Shown: piece by piece, positions 2,567 to 33,200 of the stretch
How the letters are laid out: each line of letters starts with the position of its first letter
Position numbering within the stretch: position 1 is the stretch's first letter
DNA from: Stylophora pistillata
Taxonomy: Eukaryota
Length of the DNA stretch: 64,000 nt
Direction: 5' to 3'
Assembly: GCF_002571385.2 (NCBI RefSeq)
Contig: NW_019217867.1
Coordinates: forward strand, 465,108 to 529,107
Notes under the pieces: model-generated
The model's input: only the letters and a program-made list of their open reading frames with translations
Databases searched by the model: none
What the model was told of the DNA's origin: nothing
Translations under genes and position numbers: made by a program

Positions 2567-2599
2567 ATTTCAAGATGTAGCTCAGTTATTGCCACGAAG

Positions 2600-2855
2600 G
2601 CAGCCAGCGCATGAAAATTAGCTACCTTTATGACGTAACAATGACTAGCTCCACGTAATTGCTTGAATGTGACTTGGATTTTCATCGAGAGGAAATTTCA
2701 GTCTGTGCGCACATATGCGCCTTCTGTCCTCCCCTAACATCCGGTAAGGTTCCTTTTACACGTGATCAACGAACGCGCATTGGTGGAAATTTGATGAACT
2801 TTGACCGCGAAACTAGACACACCGCCACTATGAGGCTCGAAGATCACATGTAAAC
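2600..2855. promoter_or_regulatory. Putative (bidirectional) promoter upstream of the STARD7-like gene
   Basis: Locally CpG-rich stretch with TGACGTAA (CRE/ATF-like, ~2630), TGCGCACATATGCGC (NRF1-like, ~2706) and CACGTG (E-box, ~2759), lying between two divergent ATGs. Motif resemblance only. Confidence 0.4.
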
Positions 2856-2948
2856 ATGGCGGCTGTGTGTAGGAGATCTCACTCGTTCTTTTACCATCTT
2901 TTGGGTTCTTTACCGTGAACGATCCTCACATTTTATCTGAGAAAAGGA

Positions 2949-4288
2949 ATGGCAGCAACAGGGCCGTACATAATCTACAAGTCTTCCCAGTTCTGCGCTG
3001 CTGTTCGTTGCAATGTTGGCTTCGATCATCCACTTCGCAAGCGAATTCGTGAAGTCGAGTTCCCTTTTCCAAAAGGAGCAGACACGCTGCCTCTTCGGCT
3101 TAATCTGGAAAGTTTGAGTTCCGCAGTTAATGAAATATGCCAGCAGATGAGAGAAAGAAGAGAAAAATACTTGCTTCAGAGACAGAGCATCAAGCAACGA
3201 AGAAAAGGTTTTTGCGAAGATTTTTATGCAGAGAAGACAGAAGGAAATCTGAGTTACGAAAACCAGTTGGCAAACCGGGACATTCGCCTTCTTGGTGCTG
3301 GTGGATTTTTGTGGGATAGGGAGCGAGTTACGGATTATGAACTGTTCAGGTTAGTTACGTTTGTAATCAATAATAATTATTCTTGAGTTGAACAGATTAA
3401 CTTTCTTGTTGTAAATGTGTCTATTGAAAATGTTTCACAATCAGTCATCGAGCAGGTCTCAGTCAAGCTTCCTAGTTATGCTGTGTGCTCCAAGTCAAAT
3501 CTCTTTCAAATCCCATTTGTCATGTAAACCCGTAAATTTGCACCAGATCTTCATGTTTAGAATTTAACGTCTGATTTACATGTACACCCGAGAGTCGATC
3601 AGCGAATTGCCAGAGCTACATGTAGGTAGGAAATTAAAATGTTGAACGTTTTAAGACTTGAGTTTTTTGTCTGGTATTACATAAGTTGTTTTAATTTCCA
3701 AGGGGCGCTCATTGTGGTTACGATGATTGTTGTTGTTTGGCTGTTTGTATTTCTTTGAGATTTGGTTCGTGCTTAGCTGGTGTATGCTGGACGTTTGGAG
3801 GGCAAGGAAAATAAAAACGAGTTACCTGAGCATAGCAAACAACAACATCAGTGTGAGCGAAGGAAGGTTCTGATAAAAATAAATAAGAAACAGAAAGAGT
3901 GGATGATATATTCCCAGCCTGAATAAGCTTAAAATCCAGAACATTAGACTAGTAGAGCCATACAGAATGGTAGTCACCACTTATTATTAACTGCAGAGTC
4001 TTTTAGGTGAAGCTGTGCTCTCTATCCAGATGTCAATACTCCCCTACCTTTCCACTTTCTCTAGCCGTCAGCTAAGCTTCCCACCCTGCAACCCTTAAAG
4101 TTTACTACACTGCCTTCTTCTTCCTTTTTATCCTGCCTTATTACCCTTTGCTTTGATAATTTGTAAATTATATACATGTAACTTACCCTTTAACTCCCAT
4201 TGGTGACCAAGACTGGATTTATGCTTACAGTATCAATACAATATCAAGCAGACAAGTCATGAGAATAGCCAAAAATACCAATCAATTA

Positions 4289-12229: not shown

Positions 12230-15200
12230 CTGAAGATTGGAAAAGAAAAACAAATAAATTTAACCTTCTAATCAAAGATGGAAGCGAGAAACTTCGTTTC
12301 AATTCAAAATTCTCCAAAAAATGTTCAATTCAAAATGCTCCAAAAAATGTTCAATTCAAAATGCTCCAAAAAATGTTCAATTCAAAATGCTCCAAAAAAT
12401 GTTCAATTCAAAATGCTCACTGGCGCCTTTATTTTAACCTTACCTTGGGTGTTAGCAAATCTGATGATTACCGACAAGTTATACATGCTCTTGGTTGTTG
12501 CCTCGCTGGATGGTTCTACATCAGCCATCATGGCGTCTTGAAATAAGAAAACTCGTCCAAGAAGGGTTTCCAAGAATTCCTTCTTGAGTATTTCTCGAGT
12601 GTCAGCAAGGGTAGCATCGCTAGGAAACTCGACGAAGCCGATTTTCGTGAAGGGCTTTCTTCCTTCTCCTTCCGCGACTGTGTTGAGGACATTCACGGGA
12701 AGTCTGACAGTGTATGACTCCTCTGTCGTAAAAAAGGATTGACACAGTTTGAAAAAAGAACTATTACAAACATTGTACACGGGCTGAGTTGTTTGGTAGA
12801 AGTTAAAAAAAAATTCTCCGTAGACTGCGTGGAGCAATGTTTACCTTGCCCTTTAACTCGCAGAAGTGATGAAGTTGTAACTTCTGCCCATGATATCCAT
12901 ACATTATCCAGCAAACAGAAAATGAGAATCTGACTCAAACTTATCAGGTAGACGTTGTGTTATCTTGATCTCACACGAAATTCTCGTAACTACTTTACAA
13001 GGAAATGTGAAACAGCTACATGTAGAAGGGACAGTGAACAATCAGAGCTTGGGAATTGAACGGTTAACTGTCGAAAATAATTTTGGATCACATTGTCAAT
13101 CTATTGTTCTTGAGAATTTTTACACCCCGTGAGCCAACTAGAAGCGAAACGAAATGCAAAAGCAGTCGCTGAGTTGTCATATGCTTTTTCCTGCCCTTCA
13201 GACTGTTTGAATCATTGGTAATGAGTTTTCAAAGGAGTTGATATGCATAACCCTGATTATTGCTTCAGTTTTGGTATTCCAACACTCAAGCGAAAAGCGT
13301 CGTCGTCTGTTAACTCTTTGACCCTTAAAAGAGAGTGACTAACATCTACTTTCTCCTTTTAATATCACTCCTGAATCCAACATGAAAGTCATGGGAATTA
13401 AGGAAATGAACACTAACTTAAAGCTCCTGATTGTACAACAAATTCTCCTTGTCAGCACCTTATAAAATGTTTAGAGAACAGTATGGAGAATATGCATACT
13501 GATATATGGATATAAAGGGCGAAATTCTTACGCTTAGGCTAGAAACTAAGAAAATTTCAATTAAACTGAATAACCCACCTTCTACTGTGATGTCATTTCC
13601 GTCGTTACTGTTTCCCGCGTATCCAGGAGGAAGCAAAGTGACGTTCATTTTGGGTGTACTGTGACCGGAAGAGGGGCGGCTAGAATCACGAGATCTTGTT
13701 TGAGCTGCAAAGAATAAGACGGCTCTATAATATTGACGGCTCTATGTAATTGACGGCTCTGTGTTATTGACGGCTCTATGTTATTGACGGCTCTATGTTA
13801 TTGATGGCTTTGTGTTATTGACGGCTCTATGTTATTGACGGCTCTGTGTTATTGACGGCTCTATGTTATTGACGGCTCTGTGTTATTGACGTTATGTTAC
13901 TTTTGGACACCCATTTCAGCAGGCTACAACAACTTACGTGATTCTTGAGCCATCAGCCTCTTGTACAACACAGCTTTCTCAAAAATAAAATGCCTAGAGC
14001 TTTGGTCTTTTAAAGATTTCCTGGTGGGAGTACCCGAGTTAGCCGAAGATGGTGTCCCATTCCTTGTCAACTCTTCGTCTGACGAATCACTGCCAAAGGA
14101 CGAACCATTTTGAGCTTGCAGTCGTAACTTTTGCGGTGATAGTCCTCGTTTTGGTGTTTGCGGGCTTAAATTAATCGGTGATCCTTCAGTTGAGGAGTTC
14201 TCTTGCACCAAGATTTGGCTGTCACTTTTCTGTATCACCGTCTGTCTACCAAGAATCGATGAATCTCTGATGTTGGCGTCGATTGTTAGAGACGAGAGTG
14301 GAAGCCGTGGAGTGCGCCTAACAAGCGCGGGAGAAGTGTTCTCCGACCACGCTTCAAAAGACGCCTGGGACGAGGCAGAATTCACTTTGCGTACCTTCCG
14401 CTTAGAAAAGTTACCTGTTTTCGCTGAGGTGTTTCTTGAAGAGGGCCTCGACGATGGAGGTGTTTCATTGTCCGACGACTCGAAACAGTCATTGGTTAAT
14501 CCGCTGAACAGAATCATCTCGGTATCTCCCATCTTTTGAACCCTCTGCGAGGCTGAATTCGAATCGATCATGTTGATTTTCGATGCGCTTTTCCATGAAT
14601 GTTTGCCTTTTGCTCGTCGAACACGTTTCCTACAGAAGAAGAAGGCCACTCCAGTGATAACACCAAGAACGACGACCCCGCATACAGTGATTACTGCAGC
14701 TGTTGGAAATGTTGATCGGTCTTCCTCTGCATGCAACACCTTATCATTACCGTGATAATCTCGTCCGTCCACGCGCATGACCATTTGAGCTTGATACTCC
14801 GTGTTGTTCACACGCAAAATGTACCCCGACTTGATCATGTCCCATAATGCAACTAGGGTCTTGTCTATCTGGGATCTCTGGGCCGTAATGTCAAAATAAA
14901 CCAGGATGCTGCCTCGTGCGAGTGTCACATTATCAATCTTTGCACGTGAGAATCTTGAAGTTAGGTCTTTTATGATCGTTTTCACAAAGATGTCCTTGTT
15001 TCCTTCGACTTTTGAGAAATCGTTTTGGAAAACAAACATAACGTTTTTCATGACAGGTGGATCAAGACATGTTGATGATGACTCTGAAATGTTGACAGTT
15101 ATCTGAGGCGAGTGTCCACTGCTGACCACCAGGGCAGCGTTTGGCGCCAATTGAACCCTTATTGGCGCAGGGAACATTTGATAACGTGAAAACATAAACA

Positions 15201-18200
15201 GAGGTGTGACCACTGGTTCGGGCCACTGACCACCCTTCGTTACCTGAATCATGGACACGCCTAGGTCTTCCATTTCTACTTGAAACTGTTTAGCCACCAC
15301 TAAAAAGCTCTCGCCTCGATGTTCAGCCTTCACGATACCTCCAAACAACTCGTGCTCATGATTATAAGTGGCTACCAGTTCTCCTGCATTGAATGAGGTG
15401 CTTTCAAGCTGTGCATTCAAGATGTCAGATCCTCCAGCCAACTCGAAGTATAGTTGGGTGTCAGCATTTTTCTCTTTGGTTCCATCTCGAGTGCTCAACT
15501 CAGCTATTAATTCGAACTCGCAGTTTGTAGAGGCATTCTGGTGATCAGGGACGGTCATATGAAAGAGGTTTAAGAATCGCACCATATCCATATTTGCACG
15601 TGCTAACAGGTATGCATCGTTCCGTTCTAGAACTCCATTTAGATTGAAATCCATGACTTGTAGCTGTAAAGAGAAAGTAAAGGGTCCTAAGAGCGAAGAC
15701 CTTTATTAGCTCCCCTAGGGTTAGAGTAAACAGAAAGGAAAAGATATGGCGGGAGTCTTAAAATAGATTTTACGATTGAAGGTGTGGCAAGTGATGGTCT
15801 CTTCCGTCTCATGCCATATTTACGCATCGTTCCTTTCAGTTTGAAGACAGCTTGCCAGCTTGACACGAAATTATTCTTATATCGTGACATCCTGTCGGAC
15901 TTAAAAGTTCCTACAGCATTAAAACAAGATCTCAAGAACTATGACCCTCAGTTTTTTCTATGTACACCAGTGGGCAATAATAACTAAAGTCACAAACTAT
16001 CCAAAATCAAAAATGTAAGGATCAATTACATGGAATGAACGTATTTTCAATTCATGTGCTTACCATTTTAGTGGTTGTTCGCTTTAGCAACATTTGCCCA
16101 AATTCACTATTGAAGTTATTTTCTACTGCTAAGCTGTACGCCAAAGCGAAAGCAGGGTCTTTGATATCAAATACACAGTCTGCGTTGACATCTCCCAGCT
16201 GTGAGCTCTGGCATGGTGTCAGAGTAGGTGAAAAGTCACCTATGTAACCCAAGTTTTGATCCATTAACATGTTTACTGTTGCTTGAATGGTAGGTACACC
16301 GTTTACCAAGGAGTCGTAAACTAGATCAGCAACATGTGAAGTAGCATTATCAGGGTTTGTCAGATCTGCTATGTGTAACTGACCGTAAGTGTAAGAGTAT
16401 GCACGACTCCCCTTCAGGTCGACAAAATGGATTTGACTTTCGTCGAATGAAATCTTTACATCAAACGCAAGAAGTTTTGCCTTTCCTGGATTCACTCGGA
16501 CAGGGATGGTAATTTGCTGGTTAGCTTTTAAAGCTGGTATTGCGGGGCCGTACTTCTGCCCAATATCAACACCTCCCACTGGAGGGACTGTATTGCAATA
16601 AAACTGAGTTATATGTGGCTCAGCTAGACCCTGAAGCGGAGTCACTGTCACGGTTACCAAGTCATAATAATCTGACAACAACGTGACAACGCCAGTCGTG
16701 TTATCAACCAACGCTACATCTTCCTGGCTGCTTTTGAATGCAACAAGTCCCGGAAATGTAGAGAAATTCTGCACCCTAAACATGGAGCTGTCGTTCATGG
16801 CAAAGTCCACTTGTACCTGAGCTTGCGTGGCAAAAGCAGGACCAACAAGAGTTTGATTCCTAAGCCCAGTTATTTCTACAGCTACTATTTCATTGACAGT
16901 TATTACTTCAGTTGAAACTTCAAGCCTTAGCTGACTAGAAGCTCTCCCGGAGAACTTTCCAATAAGACTTATATTCCCACTGATGCTTATTCTCTCTACA
17001 AACAACACGTTCCTCGGGCTGGGACCCACCAAAACTTTAACACCCACGTCATTGCTTACGACACTGAAGGAGGCTGATATCATCTTGGTAACGTTATAGG
17101 TGGAGTTATCCGTTAAAATGAGGTTCAGAACAAGAGCAGCTGACTGGACGTTGCCATGACGATTACCTATGCGCTTTAGCGATTTCAAGGTTACGTTTGA
17201 TCTTTTTGTGGTTGGATAAGGTACAGCTGATAGTTGTAACGAAGAAAACCCAACTACGTTGATTTTTACACGAACATTGTATACGTTGTGAACACGGACA
17301 ATAAGAACGCCATGACCCAGTAATCCCTGGTGGTTTGCTTCAATCACTCTCTTGCCACTAGCCGAGACAACTGAGAACAGTCCACCTGATTCTGACTTGT
17401 CATCAAATGTCAATCTGCTGTCATCGTCAGATAGCTTTTCACGGTTACCTGTTGACAGGAAATACTCGTCAGCTATTTTGTAAACTTTTAATAAAAAAAT
17501 GATTGGTTACATTCACTCTTGTGCGTTTAGCTTGGCGCTTTAACATGAAGAAATATAATGCAGGGTTGTTTTTTTTTTTTTAAATGTTAAGTACATTCCC
17601 TCGGAATATTAAAACGATTTAAGCCGAATCAGTTCTGGGGAAATTTTTGGATAGCAATTAAATAGAGAATGTTGGTTAGTGAGTCAAGCCTTTTATCCTT
17701 GTAGATGGAAATTTTAGTTGAACAATTATGACAACTCGTATTGAAAGGTACACAGTTACAAGCAAAGTTTCTCCATCTGTGTTCTTTTTTCCGATTTAAT
17801 GTCGTCATATCTTACCGTTTTCAAACAGCAACAGCACTGATATCGGACTACTGATTGCAACGCCAACTGCAACAGCTGGGTCCCCTGGGGGACTTATCTT
17901 GTTGATCACATCTTCAATAAGCACATCCACACCTCCACTGTCATTCACATTGGTGAGTCGAACTGTCACCTTAGCAATCGTGGAGAGCCGCTGAGCTGAT
18001 GGAGCGTTGTCGCTTACACGTACAACAAGGGTGTACCTCACGACTGTCTCATAGTCCAGATCCTTGTTGACGATAATCACACCAGTTTTGGAATTGATAT
18101 CAAAATTGTTGTCTTTATTACCAGCTACAATCGAATAACTGAGTTGCCCGTCCATTCCGAAGTCTTTGTCCGTGCCATTTATGTCCCCAACAATGGAACC

Positions 18201-21200
18201 AACAGCAGTATCCTCAGGGAGTTTTACGTAGATACTTGCGGAATGTTGTAACTGTGGTGCAAACTCGTTCACGCTCACTATTTCCAAGCTAACAAGCACC
18301 TCGTTGGTTTGTGGCACCTTACCTTTGTCCAATGCCTTGACTGTAAGGGTGTAAAGAAGATCGGCCACGTGTTGCTGTGCCTCCAGATCAAGGCTTTTTC
18401 TTACTTTTATTATTCCAGTGTTAGAGTCGATTTCAAAGAAGCCAGGAGTGTTACCTGACTTGATTTTGTACACAACTTGGCCATTTGAACCTGATGCAGA
18501 GTCAAAATATTTAGTAAATATATACAATGATTTGTTTATTTTGCCGACAGATTTTAACCCTTCAACTATTTCTTAGAGAGATCAACTCCTTATGATTGTG
18601 TTGACTGCTAAAGAGTAAGATTGTAATATTCTCCTTGCCGAGAAAAAAAACAGGTCCGGAAGTGGCACGTCAACTGATTTTCACAACAGAGGAACAGTAC
18701 GTCGGAAATGCTTATTTATTTTCACAGAATGGTACTTTGCTATGACCTGGTTGCCTTAAGTAGGGAAGACATTTTATTTGAAATCTTCTGACTGAATTTC
18801 ACTTCTCCCATAGTAGTTCAATTTATGAAGTGAGAAAAACTCAGCTGACCCACGCTTTAAGGCTAGCTTAACTTGAAAATTATTCATATACCTGCGTCAG
18901 TATCACTTGCTTGCACTGTGATGACGTCACTGCCCACTTTCACAGTTTCCTTGACAGCGACGTAGTATGAACCTTTGCTGAAAACTGGTCTATTGTCATT
19001 GATATCCCTTAGACTTACATTCACAATCATGACAGACGAACGTTGATCGGCTATCTGAACAGGCCAATCAGAAGCCTTTATTTCCAGTTGGTACTTTGAT
19101 GTTGTCTCTCGATCCAAAGGAGCGTGAATGAATATTTTCCCAGAAGACTCGATCCGAAAACGCCTGTCCTCATTTCCATTTATTATCTGATATCTAATTT
19201 GCAAATATAAAATATTATTCAACAAACGTTTATACGGTGGGGTCCAGTGATCTCCCTACTTCTAAAGACCACTAATTATAAAAAGATCAAGGTATACCGC
19301 TAGGCTCCGAAACATGCGCGGTAAATCGTACTAATATCACACTGACTGAGCCCAGAATGTTTTTAGATCAAGTTTTTCAGGCCAAAGTTGATTCAGTGTT
19401 ATTCCCTTGAAGAATACTTTCAAATTCAACCCAACAAACTCAGGTTTTTTTGTTGTCCATTTACTAAAATCAAACCAGACAAATGGTAGTTCGAATGGAG
19501 GTCATCTGAAAATGACCGTCAGCCAAATTGCTACCACGTAGTATAATTCAAGGATTCAAAAATTACTCTTAACAGGAAAGAAAGATTTAATTATGTCTAC
19601 ATAAATTAAAGTGAGTTCTCAAACAACCTTGCTCCTTTCAATACAATGACAAAACTTACGTTATGAGTCCATCAAGCCCAAAGTCCTTGTCCGTGGCTGT
19701 CACTTGGCATAACAGCGTTCCAACAGCAGTATCTTCTGGAATCTGCAATGAACGGCCAGGGTGAGTGAACTCTGGAGTGAATTCATTAACCTCTTTGACT
19801 TTCAACACGTATGTAGCATTGTTAGACAACTGCGGATTCCCATAATCCTTCGCCTCGACCAAAAGTGTGAAGTTGGGGTAAGGTGCTTGAGCAGACTCCA
19901 GATCGAGGCTCTTTTGTAAAGTCAGGTCTCCAGTGTAAGCGTTTAGACTGAAATAGCCGTCCGAGTTCCCAGATGTGATGACGTAACTCACACGCCCATT
20001 TTCACCTGAGTCGAGATCGGTAGCCAGGAAACTTGTAGCCTTTTCACCTGAAATATGATGCACGGAACGATAGATAAACGGTTTGGAACCAGTGAAAGAG
20101 AAGTGTTAAAAGAGTTGTTTAACGTTTTATGCGGATATAGACAGATGTTAATTTGTGGTCACGAGAGACATGAAACATATCTGAGACCTTGTAAAAGAGA
20201 CATTTACAAATTCACCATACTTTACGTAAGCTAGAGCCTGTTGCTTCGAAAGTCCTGTTCTGTTTTCATTCAAGATCGCGATTTCAAAAGTTTTGAAAAT
20301 GAGATAATAAAACTATCAGCTAAAGAAAAAAAAAGGACTGGTTTGGGTGCCAGAACCTGCTTTCCTATCTTTTAAATTTTGAATTTAAAACATGGCCTCG
20401 GGCGTGTTAAGTTACCGAGACTTTCGAGTAACGGGCCTCTGATCACTAAACTACGAAAAAACTTGAGGAAGATCGACTAGACAATGTATCCATATTTTTA
20501 ACACCCTCAAATGCTGTTTCGACCGGCAGCAATTCGGAAAAAAATGCGAGAGAAAGGAAAAGGAAAAAAGTTACATATCTTTTCCGTGTCCTTTGCCTCA
20601 CCTGAGGAAAGCGTCTCGGGCACCTGAATCAATGTGTAATTGTTTGAAAACAGTGGATGATTATCATTAACATCCTCGACATGGACCTGTAGGTCGAAGT
20701 CAGTGTAACGCGCACCACCAGTGGGGTCACTGTCTGATGCGCGAATGATCAGCCTGTAAAGAGGTGATGTCTCGTAATCCAGAGATGAAGTCAACGTAAC
20801 AACACCAGAAGACCGATCAATTGCAAACTTTCCGTCGCTGTTACCACTGTAGATGAAATAATGAACCATTCCTGCGGAGTGATGAGAACAACCAAGCATA
20901 AATGAAAAATATCGTTCAAATCATTGCGAATAATCCAAGTAAAGTTCTCAGTAACCTTACAAAGTATGACAATGATTTTAAACGTCTTCTGCACAGATGG
21001 TTCAAGGTTCTGACAAAGTAGAAGTAGATCTCAATTAAAAGCCACATTGTCGCCGTTTATTTTTTTATTTTTCGAAGAATTAAAATGGGTCTCTACCTTT
21101 CAGGCTAAAAAAATCTTGACGGACCCATACAGGCTTCCCTTTGAAGCCTTGTGATTGCAACAATTTAATAAAAAATGAACCATTCAGAGTTTCGCTATGG

Positions 21201-24200
21201 CGAGAAATCTTTCAGCGATTTATTTTCCTCTTTTTTTCCAACGTCATAAGTGGCTTTTTACGGTCTGTGCCACAAGGAAAGCGAAGAAATTCCTAATAAA
21301 GGAATAAACAATACTGTTAAAAGCCCCAGTCAAAACAAACCCAGTCCCTTGATACTTCGTTATTACCAGTACTGTTTCTGTACTACCAGTCAGTAAAATG
21401 TTTTTATGTAGACCTTTCCATTTTACCTTGCACTCCGAAATCCTTATCGGTAGCATTCACGTCAAACAACACCAGTCCATTTCCAGGATCGTAATTTTCC
21501 TTTAAGGTAATAGAAGCTGATTGCTCGTGAGTCAGCTGAGGCGAAAACTCATTTGCAGGTGCTATGTTGATTACCACAACGGTGGAGTTACTCAGTGTAG
21601 GTGATCCCAAGTCAGTCACATGCACAGCTTAAAAGTATCAGAACAGAATTGTTTTCTCAGTAAATGAAGAATGAGTACTTCTTGCCTAAACTTTCCTATG
21701 GCACGTCCTAATTCAGATATGTTGCTAATTCAAATTGACTATGTACTAAAAAGCGCTTTTTTTCACATTTGCTCGTGTTTTTCCAAGAAAACTACAAAAC
21801 TACAAATTAAACGCTTTTTTTTACATTTGCTTATGTTTTTCCAAGCTGGTTCAGGGATGATGCAGCTGCTCTAATGAACAGTTTTTCATCACGAAAGCGA
21901 ATAAAGATATTGCTTTACCTAAGCTGTAATTCAGGGATGGTGGAGCTGATCCCTCTAAATCGAGCGATCGTTTAACAAGAATGTCTCCTGTGTCAGCTTT
22001 GATGTCAAAATAACCGTCAACGTTTCCTGATGTGATAGAAAACGTCAACTTGGCATTTGCTCCTGCGTCACGGTCCATTGCGTCCACACCAAGTACGACG
22101 TCATTTAAGTTTGCGGTTTCGTTTACTCGAGATGCATATCCATTTTTGGTAAACCACGGGGCGTTATCATTAAGGTCACCAATATGAACTACAACAAGGT
22201 TTAAGGAGTAACGAACTTTCTCCTCAACAGCTCCGTCGTAAGCCTTCACATTCAGGTTATAAACTGCATTTTTTTCGCGGTCTAATTTACGCGCAGTAGT
22301 AATAACACCAGAGGTCCTGTTAATATGGAAGCTGTTGTCGATGTTTCCCGCATGGAGGGTATAGTAGACATCACCCTGACTTCCAATGTCATTGTCTGTG
22401 GCATGGATAGCCATGACATAGGAGCCAATGACTGTTCCCTCATCAATATGAACTGTGCGGTTCCCTGGAGTGAACACTGGAGAATAGTCATTGACGTAAT
22501 GGACCTAAGAGAGAGGAAATAGATAGAAGTTGTATGATGAGACAGGTTCGCAGAAAGCTGAGAGGGTTAAGAGAAGGTAAACAGTTTGGTGGCTCGATGG
22601 ATAGGTAGGAAGGTAAGTAGGGAAGAAGGTAGTTTGGGATAGTGGGAATATATTTGATAACTAAAGGTAACTAGATACCATTGCGAACTTTAGGGAAGTG
22701 GTTTGTTTAGTATGTAAGTAAAGGGGCTGTTTTACACACAGGTATAATGAACTTGAGAGAATACCGAGGGCAGAACAACGCCTTCAATCACGATTCATTG
22801 ATAACCTAATTAAACTGGCTCACCTCAAAAGCGGCTGATAGGACAACATGTCCATAGCTCGATTCAAACTTCAATACATAACCAAGGCCGTACAAAGTTA
22901 CGAGGAGATCATTAAACACAGCTCGCTCCTCAACTACTGAAATATTAAATGTCCCATTCAAAAAAGACCCTCCAGGCTGGGGGTTGGCATATAATGACAC
23001 AGTAATCCACCATGGGGTCTTCAAAGGTGCAGCCTTTCTACCTGTCCCCAAATCTCGAACTTCCACCACTGGCTGAGTACCAAATGGTACAGATTGATTT
23101 GCACGAGCTACTTGTGAGACGATCTCCAGATAAAACTCCCTTGGTTTTACGTCAAATGAATCAGACATGGCCAACATTCCGGAGTATGCTTGTGAGTAAG
23201 GACTGACCGACACGTTGAATTTCATTCGATAATCGGTAGCCGCATCGTAAAAACTAAAGTTTGAAAACTCTATGCGCCCTGAAACTGGTATTTGGAATTT
23301 CCTTTGGCCGAGTAGCACCTGGTTTCCAGCTCCTTCTTCCATTGAAGCTAGAATCGTCCACTTTCGACGGCGCCAACCCAGATTTCCAACCAACATGTTA
23401 GTGGCAGTGTCTCGGATCTCGAGCACAGGTTGGTGGCCGCATGGGACGGTATCATTGCAGTCTCCTGAAAAAAAGACAATACAAGTAGGTTTTTAGCTTA
23501 TAGAGATTACATTTTGAATAGTTTACTTCCGAGAGTAAGTCATTTGACCATTCTCCATTAGACGGCCGCAAAACTGCAAAGATTCTTCAAAGTTGAAACT
23601 TTGTCTATTTCAGTGACACCATAGCGTAAATGCGTAAATGTAAACTTGGAAAACGTATAAAAATTTGCGTTTCATACTTTGAAAGGACGAGCCTTTCAAC
23701 CGTACTAGAAATGAATCACTAAAAGATCCTACTCTTACCTGGCTGCTGAGTAATAACCAGGTCTAAGACCCTTTCTTTCACGTTAAAAGGAGTGGTGTTA
23801 GTTGAGAACTGGTAACGTGATGATGGAACTGTGAAAGCTTTGATTATAAGAATGTAGTTATTGTCCTTATGGTCGATAGCGAGATCACGAAATGACGCAA
23901 CACCGCCAGAAAACTCTACACTGGACGATCCATTCAGGTTTCCTGGAGGTGGAATTAAACAAAATCGACAAATATTAGTCGATCGAATTGAAAACATAAG
24001 TCTCGTTCTTGCATTTAGCATTCATTCTCCTTTGATCATGATATCATTTACAGTCTAGATTAAGAAACTGTGTCTATGCCTCTTTAAGAAATGAGAATGG
24101 AAAACTATACTTATTTAACACAGGATATTTGATTTCTAAAAGATCAGTTAAATCGAGAGCAGACAACACCTTGCATGATATGGGCAGAAGGTATTGGGCA

Positions 24201-27200
24201 CTAATGTCGTTTTTCAGATCTGATTTTCGCTATTGCATAAATAGCGCTCTCTACTGCGAGGATCGTGCATTATACGTAATCTCTAATAAACATCAGAATC
24301 TCAAATTTTCTTTTAAAAATAATATTTCCATCTAGTATAATTTCAGAGCTGAGCAAAGAGTTTCCAGCACTCTGATTGGTCGAGCGGTTCCTTATATGTC
24401 GCTATATAAACCGCCCCACGCGGTTTATATAAAATGTTAAAATAAAATGTTAATAAATGTTACTAAAATGTTATGATTTTAGAAATTTCTCTGTTGTTCA
24501 GCTCTGAAATTATACTAAAACAATTATTCGCCTCAGGTTCGGTGAATATTGTCGAATAATACCCGAGACGAAGTCTCGGGGACTATTCGACAATATTCAC
24601 CGAACCTGAGGCGAATAATTGTTAATTAAAACAGTTGTTGGCCATAGTTACCTTTATAGTCGTGTGAATTAAGTAGCGAGGCCAAACAAATCCACTTCCT
24701 CCCCTTCCACCCGGTGTTCGTCACTAGTTCTCCAGTAGCAGCGTCGCGGACCTCAACCAAAGGCTGCTGGCCAAAAGGAACGGTTTCGTTGGAATCACCT
24801 GGGTGTCTTACTAGCGCAAAATATAATACTCTCTCTTTGACTTCAAAGGGTGTTGACGCAGATGTGAAGTTAGCTTCAGAAGGAAGGGATACTCTGTATT
24901 CCAGGACGTAGTCTGTGCCGTTGTGGCTAATGTTAAGGTTAGTAAAGTTTGCCCAGCCATCATAGCAGGGTACAGTCGTATTTCCACCCAACAAGGCACC
25001 AGGGTCCCCAGTGCCATTCTTGATTGACGCAGTTACATACCTGAAAATATTCAGAACAAAAGTTCATTAATCTCATGTAATTAAGGTATCTTAAGTTGTT
25101 CCCCACCCTCCAACTCGTCAGTGGTATCAGTTCAGACATATCCCAGTAATAGCCATTTTTTTCTCAGTAAAAATGCATTAATTATTACAAAAATCCCCCC
25201 CCCCCTCCTGTTCCTCACTAAATGTTAGACAAGAGAAGATACAGCTTATGTTGTAAAGAAGAGACAACGTTTTTACCGTTGAGGACTAAAGTTTTAATGA
25301 CCTGATTTCTACATACACAAGCACAGTAGTGATACACAAAGATGAATAAATAATCTATATGTATTACACAGCAAACACAAAAGACGAATGTGAAACTATT
25401 TAAATTCAGATTATGCGGATGTCATTAAGATAGCTCGCGGCATGTCATTAAGATAGTTCTTATTATCTCAATCGCACGGAGTATTCATGGTATATAACAG
25501 TTTATATTCTCTTGATGCTAGAGCACACAGCCTCAGTTTTTCAAGGGGACAGGGGGGTGCCATTAATTTTGGGGTGAAACAATATAAGGAGAAGTCTTTG
25601 AAATTAGCATAGAAAATCATTAAAAGTATTCTTTGATTATGTGTCGAAAGTGAGTTGTCTACTACAAAATGCTTTGAAATTCTTACCATTGTTCACGGTC
25701 ACTATGTCCCAGCATGGTTACGGTGCGGTTGAGTTTATCAACCATCACCAGCTTGGGTTGAATTTGAAAAGGAACAGTTTCGTTTGCACCACGAGGTTGT
25801 TGTACTATAACAAGTCGAAGAGGTATCAGGTAATCATGCGCCAGACTGGACTTGTTGCCTTCTTTCATCATTTCGACTTGATCAAACCGCCATGTTCCAT
25901 TCTTTGGTCCGGCTGATAGAGAAGGTACGAGTTAAATCATTAAACTTTTTTTTGTTATTGTTGTTGAGGTTTTTTCATCTTTTATTTATTTTTAGCTATT
26001 TATTTATTTCTTTTGTACGGAGGACCTATTGCTGTTGCAGTGCTCCAGATCTCCCTAAAAGCCCATTGAATATTACCTACCATCTTCGGGTGTCGCTCGT
26101 TTCCATCCTTCCGGCAGTTTTCGTGGAGGCTCGGGATCTGTCACCTTAATCGATAAAATGTCCAAATCAAGGGAGGAAGCCATGTGCCCTGTTTGTGCTG
26201 CCTCCACAATTTTGGAAGCTATGGACTGGAGACCAATGTACTGACCAATGGGGCTCTTCGAAGGTGAGGCTGTGGTTGTCGCGGTAACAAAAGGAGGACT
26301 AGTAAACCTGTACAGAAAAAGAAAGGGCAAAGAATTATATGATAGTTATTTGGTATTTAAATAATACTGAGGTTGGTGCGCAAGAGACTTACGTGGAATT
26401 TCCAGGGGAAAATGTTTCCTCAGGTGTGTAAGAAATGTGACGTTCTGGCGGGTCGCCTATTTCGATTGTGACTGTCATCACCTCATCATCCGAAGCTCTT
26501 CGTCGTCTCCGGTTTTTCCCGGCGGCATTTACGATCTCGACCACGCGAATGCGAGATTCGTCGATATTAAGGAGTGAAGCCAGATTCTGAATTAAATTTT
26601 TTTCGAAGAAGTCATTAAAATGGACAGGCCTGCTTCCTAGAAAATACAAACAAAAAAGTAATGGATAAATTAGAATTTTGAGATCTATACATAGTATTCC
26701 TTGAATAGTCGATAAGTACAATGCTATCGTTATCCTTACATAGATACCTCAGCCCTTCATTTATTGCGGAAAATTCGGATAATAGGATTTACACAAAAGT
26801 AATTTCAACTGTTGTGACATGATATCCACGTTCACCTACAATAACTTAGATGCTCACCGAGCTTAACTTGTACAACTGGAGCAGTTCTTATGTCCAAAGG
26901 GACATTTCCTTTGACGAACACATAAAGCAGTTGGCTTTCTCGATCGTAGTAGTTGGCCCCACTGATGCTATTTAATGTCGGCTCAAACTGGCCATCCGGG
27001 AGCTTAGGATCTTTCTTTTTGTAGCTGAAGTTTTTCTCGTCGAGTTTTGCGTTAGTTGGGAATATGAAGGCGCCTGTGCGATATACGTCCAACCGCTGAG
27101 ATGTGGTGTACCTAATAGCAACTCGAAGAGCTTGGGAGCTGTTGGCGTTTAGCAACATTAGGCGAAGGCTTTGCGGATTAGTGCCTGAGAAATATAAGAA

Positions 27201-30200
27201 ATTAATGCACCGAGAAATATAAAATGTCTTTCTTTACCGGAATTAAAAACCTGCGTTTAAAGAAAGTAGGAAGAAAATGAGAAAAATATTACAAAACATT
27301 TTATCAGACCATAGCGTGAACAAAGTGGACGATAGTGGGATAAAAATTCTCATTTGGAAATTCGAAAACAAACCAAAAAATTTCCTCCTTTAAACGAATG
27401 TGTCTTGCGAAGATCAGTCCTCGTAATTCAAGACAAAAAAAGATCACGATAAAGTGTTTTCGTTTATTGAAGGAGTTTCTTACCAGTGAAATAAATGGTA
27501 TAGCTTTGTTGTGTTGCCACGATTGAGAAAAATGTCGATATTCTCTCCATGCACGCGTATCCAAAGCAACAACCATGATCCATGGGTCCGTTAAGCAAAT
27601 CTGTGTATCCATTGGACGATAAGGCAACTGGAGACAGCCTGCGAAGCTCTGTGTCAGCGTCCAAGCTCTCGATTATGAACATGTGATAGTCTAGGTAGAC
27701 GGTAGAAATAAAAAAAGAATTTTATTTCATAATTTCGCCTTTGTTGCAATTTTCCGATGAACAAAACAATTTACGTTTTTAATTCTCACCCAGCTTGCTG
27801 CATTTGTATCCATTCCATGCAGCATTCCATGAACAAAAACTCTGCGCACGCGTTCCTCGTACAATCCCATGATGCGGTGCCACAACAGATGCGTTCAACT
27901 GCGAACCGTCTGGTGACGTAAGTAAGGCTCGAGGCATGCGGTAATCCCCTGAAATCGAATGTGTTATTCACTGTTTTTTTTGTTTCTCAAGGCAAAAATT
28001 GGTATAACCAAAAAACTACACTTTACATGATACAAGTTTTGGATTAGTTAAGTAACTGGAATTAAGTTTTCTTAATCAATTTGCCAAATTCACTTTGTTT
28101 CTAACAGTGGTAACTAACAAAAAAAAAACGCAAAACGCAAAACGCTGTATTACCCAGTCCTCTTCGCGAGTCCCCATTCCACTCGTATTCAGCCTTGGAA
28201 ATGACACTTCCGCCGGAAGTACCAGTGAGAGTTCCGTCAAGATCCTTAAGCAAAACATGCTTAGCTCCATCACAATCCATATCAATACAGTCAGATGGGT
28301 TTATCCAGGCGATATTTGATGGTGGTATATAAATTAACTTATCATAATCAACATTATGTAAGGAAATGCCGCGTATTTCGACTGGATGGAATGCATCTGG
28401 GGACTTTGGATTGGTTGTGAATACCACACTGTCATGTCCACACTTGGTTCCAAAATAGGCAAATCCAACGTCAGTTAGTCTTACAACTCCCGGTATTGCT
28501 GGATAAGCGTTAATGCCGTGCCAGGCTTTCTCAGGAGCCAGGCCGGGTCCCGATGCAAACGTTGAGAGCATGAAAGCTGTGTTACCGCCCCCTTTGTAAC
28601 GCGGCGCGCGGACTTGGTCGGTGATATGAGAGTTTCGAGGCGCTACCAAGTCACTCGCACACTGAAAGCTTGGACTGGTGCCAACTAGTAGAACTCGATC
28701 AAGATGAACAAACTTGTTAGCGGTTACGTGGGAAAGCGCAGGTGGTCTCCAAACATTTAGCAGGATTCCTGGAAATGGAAATATCAATCTAATGGAATTT
28801 TAACAAAAATGCAAATGTTACGTGAAAATAATTTACTGATTGCATCGTATCATGAGTGGTACCATGAAATAAAAAGTCAAATGCAGATTGATTCGATTTC
28901 AGGCAAATGTTTGAAAACAACTCAGTAATTTCTTTCAAATTGACCTTCCTAAATAAAACTTGCCTCAGGTCAGTTTTTATTTCATAAGTATTGACTCTTT
29001 AGCTCTACCAGAATTGCCCTAAAAAAGAAGTTTGCGAGTGACCGTCTGTTATGCAACCATGTAAAAAAAAAAAGGTTTGAGATAAGAGCAGTAATATCTA
29101 ACCTGTTAAAAAAAAAAAACTTTATGTTAACAAGTTCGTTACCGATATTATTATCCACTACGACTGTATCCTGTAAAATAACTCGAGATGTTGGGAAACC
29201 AAACACGCCAAAATCCCAGCTTTTCCAAACGACAAAATTAGCAATCTTAAGACAATCAGGCAGACCGTCAGAATAGCCAATATGTATCCCGTGGAGGGCA
29301 GTGTGGGCAGTGTTACCCTTCCAGCCTCCATCAGGGCTGTCACCATAGCAGGTCTCCCCCCGGATGTGGAACCCAATCCTTTCACTCCCCGCTGCGGCGT
29401 TGTCTCGGAGAACGATGGAAGAGGCTTTGCTGATGTCAAATGACGCGTGCCAGAGTTTATTGTTAACTTCATGTCTCCCTTTGTAAGTTGCTGCAATGCA
29501 GAAGAAATCCACGTCACATGAATAAAGAGTTCGATACAAATTGCGGTGTCTCACTAATCAAATCTAACCAGTTTTCACTTTCGAAAACTTTACCAGTCAA
29601 TTACTGGATATTCGAGAACTTTCAAGAACATTCCTAGACTTTTGTAAATACGGTTGTAGCAGCTAGATCTTTACAAGTGCAGCGAATAACTTTTCATAGT
29701 TGAGAGGCAATGGAGGTTGTGTTAAGGTGAACTTCACCGGATCGTCGAAAATGGGTATTATACAAAATCCATAGTTTGAACGTAAGAAAATAATGGTTAC
29801 TCTCGCAATATTGTATCATATTAACTCAAGTTTCGATCTTTTTTTCTCTCTATGCTTATTTAGTATAATTTCAGAGCTGAGCAAAGAGTTTCCAGCTATC
29901 TGATTGGTCGAGCGGTTTCTTATATGACGCTATATAAACCGCTTTACGCGGTTTATATAAAATGTTAAAATAAAATGTTAATAAATGTTCCTAAAATGTT
30001 ATGATTTTAGAAATTTCTCTGTTGTTCAGCTCTGAAATTATACTATAAAAATTATATCGCCTCAGGTTCGGTGAATATTGTCGAATAGCCCCCTCGACTT
30101 CGTCTCGGAGATTATTCGACGATATTCATCTCGCCTTCGGCGAATAATTATTAAATGTTAACTACTTAGCCTGTGATTCAAATTAATCTGTTTCTCGATC

Positions 30201-33200
30201 TACCTGGTGAAACGCTCAACACCGCCAAGTTACGAAGAACTTTATTATTTGTTCCCCAGACTCTCACGGATGAGCCTACTGTGTGATGAATTACGTTATC
30301 GACGACAATTAACTCGTGTGTTCCAAATACACCAATGGCGGTGTTGAAGCCATCATGGAATGAATTACCCCGGATGTAGGATGACTTCAGATTGCCAACA
30401 TCCAGGAACGCCAGACAATATCTACAATTGGAAGCAAAATGCATTTTTTGTTGTCGTATGGTAATGATATACATGTACGAGCAGCGTTTAAAGTAGATTT
30501 TTACGTTATGTCTCGCTGCACGGAAAGTATATTACGCACAACATTTCCCGTTTTTCCTACCATCTTAAAACCTTGCAGCACATTGAGGAAAAATCGGTTC
30601 TTAAAACATCACCTTTGTGTATAAGATTCGCATTCGTATCTAACAATCGCGGTTTCCATTCAGTTACCTTGGATCAAAATAGTCACTCCATCCTTCCTGA
30701 CCACAATGATGAAATTCCACATTCTCCATACGAAATCTCCTGTTAGATGAAACCATGCCATTAAACGAGCCAATCAACACGCGACTACCGAAAGACTGTT
30801 TCTCAAGAACGTGGCCAGCGTCATCAGCGCCCTTGATCACAATGTTTCTTGTCAGTAGACCCACTTCAGCGGCTAGAGAATAGTTCCAAGTACCCGTGCG
30901 GTACGATTCAGCGAGGTGTCTGTATTTAAGGGTGTTGTTCAGCTGAAGGGTCTTCCGATCAGGAAAGACGTAAACTGGAGAAGGAAAGGAAACCTTAATT
31001 ATTTACTGGAATTAAAATTCGAGGGTCATTCTATAATTGCACGAGATGTTTAAGTCTTCATTCTAGATTTTCTCGCAGATGCAAAAGAGATCACTTATTC
31101 TCCATCTTGAACTGTGGAGACGGATTGAAAATAGATCTGTTATAAAAGTTGAGATAAACTAAAGTGTCAAATTTTCATTCATAGCTCTTCCTCTTCCACT
31201 CTTTAGGAGCCCTAAACCATTATCTGAATGCGATGTAATGTGGAGATATAGGCCGAGTACTTCGGTTTATTAGGACGATAATGTTTACCGTTACGAAACG
31301 AAATGTTGTGTCGTATGATAAGAGTAACAGCACAAGAAAGGGATAAAGTCGACAAACCGGCACTTAATTTTTCCACAGAATTTCCCAATTTTTAGATCTG
31401 AAGCAATAAACACAGTTGGTTTACCTATGGTATGGATTTCTGTGTCGTAAGGTTCATAGGAGGTTGGTGCAATCACAATCTTTTCCCCTGGATTCCAGTC
31501 CACTTCCTCTTGTAAAGAAATAATGCTACTTCCTGGGTCAGCAGTTTTACTCAGTCGCGTCCAGTACACTGTTCTATTCAGACCGTGCATTTCCAGATTC
31601 CCAAAAATAGCTCGGTGAGAGGAGGGTATCAAAAATTAGTTTAAGAGTAACTTGAAGTAAGAATTTACTCCTTTGATTTATTATATATTGGCGGCAGGAT
31701 TTCATGGCATGGGAAACTAAACGAATGTAGTATGGTTGACCGAAGTTGTAGTTTTATGTCCTCCGATGTAATTGGTTAGAGTTTAATGAAGAGTGCATCA
31801 ATCATAGCTGATGGAAACCAGCGAATTACATCGGAGTATCAAGCTTCCTAAAGCGACGTGAGGTCCGTTGACGTCATCTCCTGACTGGCAGTATATAGTT
31901 GAAACGTCGAGATCCACACTGAAACTGTGAAATTGGCGAGACAAACAATGATACTCCAGATAGTGGATAGCTAGTTCATCAACACTTACCAATGGCTTTG
32001 GAGCCGATGTTAGGACCACCTTGAATTGGAATGTCTGGAGTATCCCAATTTCCGTTTAAGTTTATAAGTACATTGCCTGTCATTGGTTGATCTTCCCAGC
32101 CAATGATAAGGTTTCCTTCTTCACCAATCACAATGTACGTTGCATTTAGAACAAAGTCCATGTAAGGTTCCAGTTCAAGGGTGCCGTATATGAAGAGTTT
32201 TCTCATGTCGGGAATTTCGGTATCCGCTACCATCCACCAGTCTAAATCAGACCGAAATTAACAATGAGAAGATGTATATATTTACCTATTTCGATAATAA
32301 GGTCACTTTCAGTGAGAATCATGTCGCTTACGTTTTTGTATGATGACGTCTTCACCATCTTGTGGAAGCTGTTTGTTGTAGCCTCCGTGTCCAGGAATTG
32401 TCCCATACCAGGCTTCCGGGTCTGACCATCGCAGATATTCAAGGGGACGTTTCTCAGGGGGTGGGGGTGGAATGGGTTTGACACAGTTCTTGAAAAAGCA
32501 GCGGTAAACCTATGAAAGTAAAGCGTTGCTTTGAAGCTTTTTTATCGCAAAAGGATCCACTGCAAATAGGAAGTAAAATCTAGATTGAGATAACTAACTA
32601 TTGTTGTTACCAAAGTTATTTTCTGTTGAATTAAATTGGCGAATGCTTAAGTCGCAAAGTTGATTACAAGTTTAAAGATCCCAAGTTAGTCTAAACGAAT
32701 AACAATCTTTGAAATGCGTTTGCTTTCGTGTTTAAGGCATGATTTAATTTCCCAGGTTAGTTTCACTACACCAGTCTCATACATGTAACTTGATTGATAA
32801 AATTCGACGTACAGTTCAAGTGAAAGGATTTTGTTTTCCTAATCAGTTTTTAGCCTTGCAAAGCGCGTCTTATTTTTCTACAAGGCTATTAAATAAATTG
32901 AACCCACCCAAAACGCTTTTTCTTCTCACATCTGAGATTCAGCGCAAAGAATCTTTATCGGAGAAGTGATTAATGATTTGTTTGTTTAATTTTTAAATTG
33001 TCGCCTAAAATCTCTAAACAATGTTACGCAAAATCCTTTTTTTTTATCTTCTTTCTTTTTATCCTTCTCGGTTTTCCTTGGTTAATCCTAATCTCGTTGA
33101 TGTCCTCAACCCAAGCAGACGATTAGTTTACTTTAAGTTTCCTTCTGTTTAATGGTAATTGTCTATAACGCCAATGCGACGCGAAATATCACGACCTTTA

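What the first reader, a model, noticed from the sequence alone, without database searches (positions are those of the whole stretch)
15585..16540. Adjacent cellulosome-type cohesin and dockerin in an animal cell-surface protein
Seen: a cohesin-like beta-sandwich (ITIPVRVNPG..LLAFDVKISFDESQIHFVDL) is followed after a short linker by two dockerin-like Ca2+ loops, DVNADCVFDIKD and DFNLNGVLERND. The second loop is only visible after splicing across a canonical intron, so this is integrated eukaryotic sequence and not contamination. Established: cohesin-dockerin is the high-affinity, mechanically strong pairing that assembles bacterial cellulosomes, and non-cellulosomal versions are reported in a few early-branching holozoans. 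Inference: carrying both halves could allow trans pairing or polymerisation between receptor molecules (a snap-fastener adhesion system), cis auto-inhibition, or capture of dockerin/cohesin-bearing proteins from microbes. The Cys in loop 1 and the upstream TPCQ Cys may form a disulfide suited to the extracellular setting.
Basis: partly seen in the sequence, partly recalled or inferred. Interest (0 to 1): 0.88.

Follow-up and report, generated by a model that had tools for sequence, protein, structure and literature searches.

The report
Cohesin-dockerin pair in coral cadherin
A coral membrane protein of the cadherin type really carries a cohesin module followed directly by a calcium-loop dockerin module, the bacterial "plug and socket" pair; the pair belongs to an old animal protein cassette whose family is already described, and its binding partner has never been tested.

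Summary
On the minus strand, exon A (16064-~17449) encodes three Ig-like domains, a cohesin-fold domain (16253-16582) and the first dockerin loop-helix. A 400-base GT-AG intron follows (15664-16063). Exon B (13938-15663) then opens with the second dockerin loop-helix. PolyA RNA contigs from coral libraries in two studies carry exactly this splice.

The cohesin call rests on fold: the best matches in an unbiased PDB scan are cohesins (Z 11.0-8.8). The dockerin call rests on both calcium-loop motifs, on a profile of intron-less paralogs whose two halves hit the two exon ends, and on paralogs that pass Pfam cut-offs. The window's own sequence stays below the Pfam cut-offs.

The pair is the end of an Ig x3-cohesin-dockerin cassette. 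The cassette occurs in at least four loci of this genome, in other corals, in a sponge and in giant proteins. It is related to the published coherin cadherins and to TMEM132.

The function is inferred, not shown. I favour calcium-dependent local self-pairing close to the membrane. The trans "snap fastener" reading looks sterically unlikely.

This scan already reported the same pair on other DNA of this genome (s1-788355, s1-788340). Verdict: a new member of a known kind, of moderate interest.

The parts
16064..17449 (-). Exon A: three Ig-like domains, the cohesin module and the first half of the dockerin. The 5' boundary may be off by 1-2 bases.
   Evidence: RNA contig pieces 16064-17449 in X1, X2 and X14. 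Open frame 16055-17506.
16589..17413 (-). Three tandem Ig-like (Big_2 / TMEM132-type) domains
   Evidence: AF2 model beta 13-275. VIA matches LigA 8gyr_A Z 9.8 and Sap 8s83_B Z 9.5 on 52-276. Remote homologs hit Pfam Ig_TMEM132_4th/5th/6th.
16253..16582 (-). Cohesin-fold module (model residues 278-387)
   Evidence: VIA wide: 2vo8_A Z 11.0, rmsd 2.5, 105 aligned; 5nrk_A 10.0; 1ohz_A 9.7; 2xdh_A 9.2. Pfam Cohesin 18.3 bits, E 0.0028. 16 of 43 orthologs hit Cohesin.
16193..16252 (-). Short linker with the conserved Cys (codon 16211-16213) that pairs by conservation with the loop-1 Cys (16175-16177)
   Evidence: C401 and C413 nearly invariant. C6 and C18 invariant in A3. Low pLDDT for residues 386-416.
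16064..16192 (-). Dockerin repeat 1: Ca loop 16157-16192, helix 1 16127-16156, then the linker helices up to the exon end
   Evidence: Profile of intron-less paralogs hits 16070-16219 at positions 3-52, E 2e-10. Helices 418-431, 437-445 and 448-452. PDB dockerins 8ajy_B, 9gvb_B and 4dh2_B are 3 of the 5 profile hits.
15664..16063 (-). Phase-0 GT-AG intron that splits the dockerin between its two repeats
   Evidence: Joint 15663->16064 in three polyA RNA libraries; colinear in run X15. A relative's natural ORF, P0233, reads straight across residues 341|342.
15541..15663 (-). Dockerin repeat 2: Ca loop 15616-15651, helix 3 15574-15615, and the tail up to the conserved VPDH
   Evidence: The same paralog profile hits 15541-15669 at positions 52-94, E 8e-5. 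89% mean identity over 33 orthologs, the best-conserved segment. N10, G11, R15 and D17 invariant.
14701..15540 (-). Membrane-proximal ectodomain, about 280 aa and unassigned: a beta-rich part, then a part that looks SEA-like by eye
   Evidence: No Pfam hit. No Atlas hit. Conserved in orthologs and paralogs. The SEA reading was not tested here.
14632..14700 (-). Transmembrane helix
   Evidence: A 23-residue hydrophobic stretch followed by RKRVRR.
13938..14631 (-). Cytoplasmic tail, first part. It is spliced on (intron 13705-13937) to exon 13579-13704 and beyond.
   Evidence: Joint 13704->13938 in RNA contigs. The relative's ORF P0233 continues to a MYND finger, Pfam E 5.4e-6.
17805..22477 (-). 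Upstream exons with cadherin repeats of the same gene
   Evidence: Pfam Cadherin E 3.5e-35, 8.9e-33, 9.4e-21, 5.9e-17 and 4e-13. The RNA contig runs on about 1.6 kb beyond 17449.

Best explanation
Shown: this is a genuine but divergent cohesin-dockerin pair. It forms the C-terminal end of an 'Ig x3 - cohesin - dockerin' cassette in the membrane-proximal stalk of a coral cadherin-type receptor. Inferred: in calcium-rich extracellular fluid the two dockerin loops hold Ca2+ and keep the helices folded, and these helices bind the flat beta-sheet face of a cohesin of the same family. The two modules are always 1:1 and adjacent, and they sit close to the membrane under a very long ectodomain. The pairing is therefore most likely local. 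Either the dockerin folds back on its own cohesin, or neighbouring receptor copies or paralogs on the same membrane link laterally. Either way the result would stiffen or cluster the stalk, rather than fasten two cells together.
For: Identity of the cohesin: its fold is ranked first among 48,161 PDB representatives (2vo8_A Z 11.0; 13 cohesin entries at Z 8.8 or more, before the first other fold at 8.7).

Identity of the dockerin:
- Both loops keep the Ca ligand positions 1, 3, 5, 9 and 12 (read directly from the sequence).
- The two halves of an independent paralog profile hit the two exon ends (E 2e-10 and 8e-5).
- Paralogs pass Pfam cut-offs: Dockerin_1 25.0 and 25.5 bits, Cohesin 31.9, 28.7 and 26.2 bits.
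- Remote relatives score strongly: Cohesin 1.1e-24 and Dockerin_1 7.9e-8.
- A model of the paralog dockerin matches almost only dockerins: 11 of 12 Foldseek hits and the top 11 VIA hits.
- A language-model search places the 195-aa piece next to bacterial proteins of about 200 aa that carry both Cohesin and Dockerin_1 (score 0.96).

The pair behaves as a unit: 155 cohesin-to-dockerin adjacencies in 147 family representatives, and no representative with a dockerin alone.

Constraint: dockerin repeat 2 is 89% and repeat 1 is 72% identical across coral orthologs, against 57-67% for neighbouring domains.

Precedent: the dockerin of R. bromii Amy4 binds the cohesin of the same protein (PMC4611034).

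Expression and splicing.
Against: No binding data exist for any eukaryotic cohesin-dockerin pair, and none was obtained here. The window's own modules are below the Pfam cut-offs, and the spliced ortholog P0233 gives no Cohesin or Dockerin_1 hit at E <= 1. Loop 1 has Cys where bacterial dockerins have Gly. The spacer between the two loops is about 47 residues, against about 33 in my recollection of bacterial dockerins. The dockerin model is only moderate (pLDDT 67, and it is of the paralog, not of the window gene). In cellulosomal scaffoldins a dockerin usually does not bind the cohesins of its own chain (my own knowledge).
Confidence: 0.5

Rival explanations
1. The modules are true homologs but no longer pair with each other. 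They serve as rigid calcium-stabilised spacers, or they bind some other ligand such as matrix or glycan.
For: The sequences are divergent and below Pfam cut-offs in the window gene. TMEM132 keeps a cohesin without any detectable dockerin (PMC6030884). 26 of 147 relatives show a cohesin without a dockerin by my profiles.
Against: The strict adjacency and order in 155 cases, and the fact that the dockerin loop-helix is the most conserved segment, are hard to explain for a mere spacer.
Confidence: 0.25
2. Trans 'snap fastener': the dockerin on one cell plugs into the cohesin on the opposed cell and gives strong cell-cell adhesion.
For: One chain carries both halves. Bacterial pairs are mechanically very strong (PMC6030884). 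Self-recognition is known in Amy4.
Against: The pair lies about 280 residues from the membrane. It sits beneath at least five cadherin-bearing exons and three Ig-like domains, and probably also a TIG/G8/beta-helix part. Two such membrane-proximal modules on opposed cells could hardly meet. This is an inference from geometry.
Confidence: 0.1
3. The pair captures cohesin- or dockerin-bearing proteins of bacteria that live with the coral (host-microbe recognition).
For: By language-model features the nearest neighbours are bacterial cohesin+dockerin proteins. Corals live with dense microbial communities (general knowledge).
Against: A pattern scan of 185,579 prokaryotic genomes found no close bacterial relative. 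The cassette is old and is inherited inside the animal and holozoan family, including a sponge. No specific partner is known.
Confidence: 0.05
4. A generic Ig/Calx-like sandwich plus chance EF-hand-like loops, or bacterial contamination of the assembly.
For: Foldseek on the whole 453-aa model returned only generic tandem Ig arrays. A PDB sequence search found no cohesin.
Against: The per-domain structural search puts cohesins first. The loops occur only here in 64 kb. The profile halves abut exactly at the intron. The transcript is spliced and polyadenylated in coral libraries. The gene has cadherin exons and introns.
Confidence: 0.03

Closest known systems
[quoted passage not shown] 2012, as cited in PMC6030884 and PMC8164589)
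   Same: A transmembrane protein with cadherin repeats plus a cohesin domain. The family found here includes a sponge protein (Corticium candelabrum XP_062511329.1) with Pfam Cohesin at 34.6 bits and TMEM132-type Ig domains.
   Different: The host is a coral (cnidarian). The texts I could read describe eukaryotic cohesins as known only from choanoflagellates and sponges. Here a dockerin directly follows the cohesin and is split by an intron. The tail ends in a MYND finger. Orthology to the named coherins could not be tested because the 2012 paper is not held.
TMEM132 family (Sanchez-Pulido and Ponting 2017, PMC6030884)
   Same: A cohesin-like domain combined with three Big-type Ig domains next to a transmembrane helix. 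Relatives of the window cassette hit Pfam Ig_TMEM132_2nd/4th/5th/6th and the TMEM132 cohesin-like domain PF23039.
   Different: In TMEM132 the cohesin precedes the three Ig domains and no dockerin is detectable in vertebrates. Here the order is Ig x3, cohesin, dockerin. The window exon itself gives no TMEM132 Pfam hit.
Non-cellulosomal bacterial and archaeal proteins with one cohesin and one dockerin, for example R. bromii Amy4 (PMC4611034) and A. fulgidus (PDB 2xdh)
   Same: One cohesin and one dockerin sit in the same chain. The Amy4 dockerin binds its own cohesin and is proposed to multimerise. 2xdh_A matches the window cohesin at Z 9.2. Bacterial proteins of about 200 aa with both domains are the nearest Atlas clusters.
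   Different: Those are prokaryotic secreted or surface proteins, without cadherin, Ig x3, a transmembrane helix or introns. Sequence identity to the window cohesin is only 7-15%.
Cellulosomal type I cohesin-dockerin complex (C. thermocellum, PDB 1ohz / 2ccl)
   Same: The cohesin fold (1ohz_A Z 9.7, 103 aligned). The dockerin has two 12-residue Ca loops, each followed by a helix. The paralog model aligns to 2ccl_B over 60 of 62 residues at 25% identity.
   Different: There is no cellulose-degrading context. The cohesin is compact, about 110 residues against about 140. Loop 1 has a conserved Cys at position 6, with a partner Cys 12 residues upstream. The spacer between the repeats is longer. 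The two repeats are unlike each other.

Membership tests
Cohesin (Pfam PF00963) | Sequence match at or above the gathering score (24.1 bits) | tested here: not met
   Window piece: 18.3 bits, E 0.0028, profile positions 11-55 of 139 only. Paralogs in the same genome score 31.9, 28.7 and 26.2 bits, relative P0078 scores 24.9, and remote relative P0093 scores 87.6.
Cohesin (Pfam PF00963) | Cohesin beta-sandwich fold | tested here: met
   AF2 model residues 278-387 (pLDDT blocks 81-94). The top structural matches are cohesins: Z 11.0, 10.0, 9.9, 9.8 and 9.7, rmsd 2.4-2.5, 102-105 aligned, spanning nearly the whole target modules.
Dockerin type I (Pfam PF00404) | Sequence match at or above the gathering score (22.9 bits) | tested here: not met
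   There is no hit for the window exons or for the spliced ortholog P0233 at E <= 1. The paralog at C215 scores 25.5 bits in the genome scan and 20.3 in hmmscan. P0076 scores 25.0 and P0093 32.8.
Dockerin type I (Pfam PF00404) | Two 12-residue Ca-binding loops (acidic or amide side chains at positions 1, 3, 5, 12), each followed by a helix | tested here: met
   Loop 1 has D1 N3 D5 D9 D12 and loop 2 has D1 N3 N5 E9 D12. These positions are at least 90% conserved. Helices follow in the models. The halves of the paralog profile hit both exon ends.
Dockerin type I (Pfam PF00404) | Ca2+ binding and Ca2+-dependent folding | not testable with these tools
   This needs ITC, CD or NMR with and without EDTA.
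Cohesin-dockerin interaction system | Specific high-affinity binding of the dockerin to a cohesin | tested here: inconclusive
   The single complex prediction returned 'no answer'. This is no evidence either way.
Coherin cadherins | Cadherin repeats, a cohesin domain and a transmembrane anchor in one protein | tested here: met
   Cadherin exons lie at 17805-22477 on the same strand and the RNA contig runs on upstream of exon A. The cohesin fold is supported. The transmembrane helix is at 14632-14700.
Coherin cadherins | Orthology to the named choanoflagellate and sponge coherins | not tested
   The defining paper and its sequences are not held. Only an unnamed sponge relative was found.
TMEM132 | Conserved region, then cohesin, then three Big domains, then a transmembrane helix, in that order | tested here: not met
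   The order here is Ig x3, cohesin, dockerin, unassigned region, transmembrane helix. The Ig domains are related only through remote homologs.

The most novel reading that the evidence does not exclude
The Ig x3-cohesin-dockerin cassette is a working, animal-encoded cohesin-dockerin system. It would be a self-complementary, calcium-dependent connector with a pairing code among the four or more cassettes of the coral genome, building lateral receptor arrays. It would also be the ancestral state from which vertebrate TMEM132 kept the socket and lost the plug.
Probability: 0.3. Interest if true: 0.8.

Novelty: new member of a known kind. Interest (0 to 1): 0.52.

Why it matters
Cohesin-dockerin is among the strongest non-covalent protein pairs known, and so far it has been studied functionally only in microbes. 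This is an expressed, strongly conserved pair in a coral receptor, and the pair is inherited as a unit across corals, a sponge and giant multi-cassette proteins. That makes two questions directly testable. Do animals use this connector at all? What does the orphan cohesin of the human TMEM132 proteins (linked to deafness and panic disorder) once have bound? The result also extends cohesin-bearing cadherins from sponges and choanoflagellates to cnidarians.

Tried and rejected
- The complex prediction of the ortholog's cohesin (P0233 160-287) with its dockerin (288-382) and two Ca gave 'no answer', score 0.01. It counts neither for nor against binding.
- Foldseek on the whole four-domain model gave only generic tandem Ig and cadherin arrays. 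A search that reports per-domain ranges was needed.
- A PDB sequence search with the window piece found nothing relevant. Profile searches found no cohesin, only weak dockerins.
- Pfam on the full exons found nothing at E <= 1.
- A pattern scan of prokaryotic genomes for close relatives found none.
- An Atlas search of the region between the dockerin and the membrane gave no usable hit.
- Nichols 2012 and Peer 2009 are not held.
Each exon was searched by reference, and the natural ORF P0233 of a relative and the intron-less paralog L002 stood in for the joined sequence. As a result, no model of the window gene's own complete dockerin exists.
- Contamination was rejected because of the introns and the polyA RNA.
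Full report
WHAT IS THERE. The finding lies on the minus strand. A 453-aa open frame (16052-17413) and a 576-aa open frame (13924-15654) carry the quoted peptides. The cohesin-like start ITIPVRV is at 16493-16513. Loop 1 is at 16157-16192 and loop 2 at 15616-15651. The loose dockerin-loop pattern D.[ND].[DN]...[DEN]..D occurs only twice in all six frames of the 64 kb window, at exactly these two places. Block shuffles give 0.0 +/- 0.2.

GENE STRUCTURE AND EXPRESSION. The first frame ends ...TTTKM followed by gtaagc. The second is preceded by ...tttacag. Runs labelled coral metagenome or 'organism A' hold the stretch. Contigs of three polyA RNA libraries from two studies join 15663 to 16064, skipping 400 bases with CT..AC on the + strand (GT..AG on the coding strand). 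They also join 13704 to 13938. A DNA-like run is colinear. So the structure is:
- exon A: 16064 to about 17449
- intron: 15664-16063, phase 0
- exon B: 13938-15663

A natural 1101-aa ORF from a related species (P0233, Logan) is 82% identical to both exon ends. It reads straight across the junction at residues 341|342 and ends in a MYND finger. Every search of the window gene was done exon by exon, by reference. The genome has 398 Mb in 5513 contigs, and the window is C84:465108-529107. Contamination is excluded by the introns, the polyA RNA and the cadherin exons.

COHESIN. Pfam on the whole exon finds nothing. On the last 182 residues it gives Cohesin at 18.3 bits, E 0.0028. That is below the 24.1 cut-off and covers profile positions 11-55 of 139 only. 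Of 43 exon-level orthologs, 16 hit Cohesin, the best at 5.3e-5.

An AlphaFold2 model of exon A built with that alignment has mean pLDDT 78.5. It is all-beta from residue 13 to 385, and the 10-residue blocks between 280 and 380 score 81-94. Foldseek on the whole model returned only generic tandem Ig arrays. The unbiased VIA-align scan of 48,161 PDB representatives reports ranges, and for residues 278-387 it puts cohesins first:
- 2vo8_A: Z 11.0, rmsd 2.5, 105 aligned
- 5nrk_A: Z 10.0
- 6kgc_A: Z 9.9
- 3kcp_A: Z 9.8
- 1ohz_A: Z 9.7
- archaeal 2xdh_A: Z 9.2

In all, 13 cohesin entries score Z 8.8 or more before the first other fold, at 8.7, and pilins at 8.2. Residues 52-276 match Big_2-type Ig domains (LigA 8gyr_A Z 9.8, Sap 8s83_B Z 9.5).

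DOCKERIN. Both loops keep the ligand positions: loop 1 has D1 N3 D5 D9 D12 and loop 2 has D1 N3 N5 E9 D12. These positions are at least 90% conserved in orthologs. The gene has an intron-less paralog type. In this genome it is a single open frame of 979 codons at C215 (L002). Related species carry P0076 and similar proteins.

I built a profile of the dockerin region from 28 such contiguous sequences, with no ortholog of the window gene among them. It hits the end of exon A (16070-16219, profile 3-52, E 2e-10) and the start of exon B (15541-15669, profile 52-94, E 8e-5). The two halves abut at the intron.

Pfam Dockerin_1 passes its cut-off of 22.9 bits in several relatives:
- P0076: 25.0 bits, profile 1-54 of 57
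- the C215 locus in a whole-genome scan: 25.5 bits
- remote relatives P0093 (32.8 bits) and P0100 (25.6 bits)

Dockerin_1 does not pass in the window gene or in P0233.

Profiles of the family searched against PDB sequences return dockerins among very few hits: 8ajy_B, 9gvb_B and 4dh2_B at E about 1, then 4dh2_B at 0.12 and 4fl4_A at 0.27 over both repeats. A model of the paralog's 85-aa dockerin has pLDDT 66.9 and the order loop-helix, short helix, loop-helix. It matches dockerins in 11 of its 12 Foldseek hits (E 0.9-7, 20-29% identity). Dockerins also fill the top 11 VIA rows (2ccl_B Z 4.7, 60 of 62 residues). Each score is weak on its own. The weight lies in how exclusively the hits are dockerins. 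A language-model search of the window's 195-aa piece gives, as nearest clusters, bacterial proteins of about 200 aa that carry both Cohesin and Dockerin_1 (0.96).

THE CASSETTE AND ITS FAMILY. A profile search of 1.84 billion representatives found 643 relatives. Many are 5-8 thousand residues long and hold several copies of the whole unit. With local profiles of the three parts, 119 of the 147 new representatives among the 150 listed hits have both cohesin and dockerin. There are 155 direct cohesin-to-dockerin adjacencies and no representative with a dockerin alone. The commonest architecture is Ig-cohesin-dockerin: 61 times single, 9 times double, 7 times triple.

Remote members hit the Pfam families Ig_TMEM132_2nd/4th/5th/6th, the TMEM132 cohesin-like domain, Cadherin, Cohesin and Dockerin_1. 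One named member is from the sponge Corticium candelabrum, and another is from EukProt. In this genome the cassette occurs at four loci, colinear in each. Genome-wide Pfam scans find Dockerin_1 and Cohesin only at these paralogs.

Upstream of the window cassette lie cadherin exons (17805-22477). Further up on the same strand are a CEMIP-type beta-helix (30178-35760), a G8 domain (37269-37799) and many IPT/TIG domains (38251-42807). I did not test whether that holds for this window.

HOW IT MOST LIKELY WORKS. Shown: the identity of the two modules, their splicing, their expression and their conservation. Dockerin repeat 2 is the best-conserved segment of this part of the protein, at 89% mean identity over 33 orthologs. 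Repeat 1 is at 72%, and the cohesin, Ig and stalk domains are at 57-67%. That points to a binding surface and not a spacer. A Cys 12 residues before loop 1 and a Cys at loop position 6 are conserved together, which fits a disulfide that pins the loop.

Inferred: the Ca-loaded dockerin binds a cohesin of the same family. The modules are always 1:1 and adjacent. They lie about 280 residues from the membrane, beneath cadherin repeats and three Ig-like domains. I therefore favour local pairing, either an intramolecular clasp or lateral links between neighbouring copies or paralogs. Self-recognition within one chain has a bacterial precedent in R. bromii Amy4 (PMC4611034). A trans fastener between cells is sterically unlikely. 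Microbial capture has no support. I could not tell the clasp from the lateral link, because no coordinates or PAE were available to me.

COMPARISON AND NOVELTY. Cadherins with cohesin domains (coherins) were described in choanoflagellates and sponges. A cohesin plus three Big domains defines TMEM132, for which no dockerin is known in vertebrates (PMC6030884; PMC8164589). The papers I could search do not mention dockerins in animal cadherins or in corals. Two key papers are not held, so earlier description cannot be excluded. This scan had already found the same pair on other DNA of this genome (s1-788355, s1-788340). I class this as a new member of a known kind.

LIMITS.
- The dockerin fold was modelled on the paralog, not on the window gene.
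- The window's modules are below the Pfam cut-offs.
- The complex prediction gave no answer.
- Taxonomy of most relatives is unknown.

Noticed in passing
window 30178-42807, minus strand: Exons upstream on the same strand encode many IPT/TIG domains (38251-42807), a G8 domain (37269-37799) and a CEMIP-type beta-helix (30178-35760). This is a fibrocystin-L-like ectodomain that may belong to the same gene as the cadherin and cohesin-dockerin part.
   Followed up: partly
window 13421-13505: A short, highly repeated element lies in the intron downstream of exon 13579-13704. Summed contig depth runs from thousands to above 100,000 in the RNA and DNA runs, with many loose ends and a 'goes back 69' joint.
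   Followed up: no
window 13579-13938: The stop at 13924 is not used. A GTAAGT donor lies right after 13938, and RNA contigs splice to exon 13579-13704. The relative's ORF continues to a MYND zinc finger (Pfam E 5.4e-6).
   Followed up: partly
L002 (G000:C215:349935-353444), 208-3144 minus: A paralog encodes the cadherin end, Ig x3, cohesin, dockerin, stalk and transmembrane helix in one 979-codon open frame, with no intron in the dockerin and a shorter spacer between the loops (36 against 47 residues). The dockerin intron was therefore gained or lost within corals.
   Followed up: partly
L003 and L004 (G000:C3:666343-669741 and 674592-677951): Two more cassettes lie 8 kb apart on one contig. 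One is followed by an fn3 domain. The other lies in a 2108-codon open frame with nine cadherin repeats after the cohesin. The second loop of L003 is close to the canonical DxNGDG form.
   Followed up: partly
proteins P0077-P0132: Giant predicted proteins of 5,000-8,000 residues hold two or three complete Ig x3-cohesin-dockerin cassettes. Their organisms are unknown; one is from EukProt.
   Followed up: partly
window 22806-29554, minus strand: Several long open frames (for example 28101-28787 and 22806-23426) lie between the cadherin exons and the beta-helix exons and have no Pfam match.
   Followed up: no
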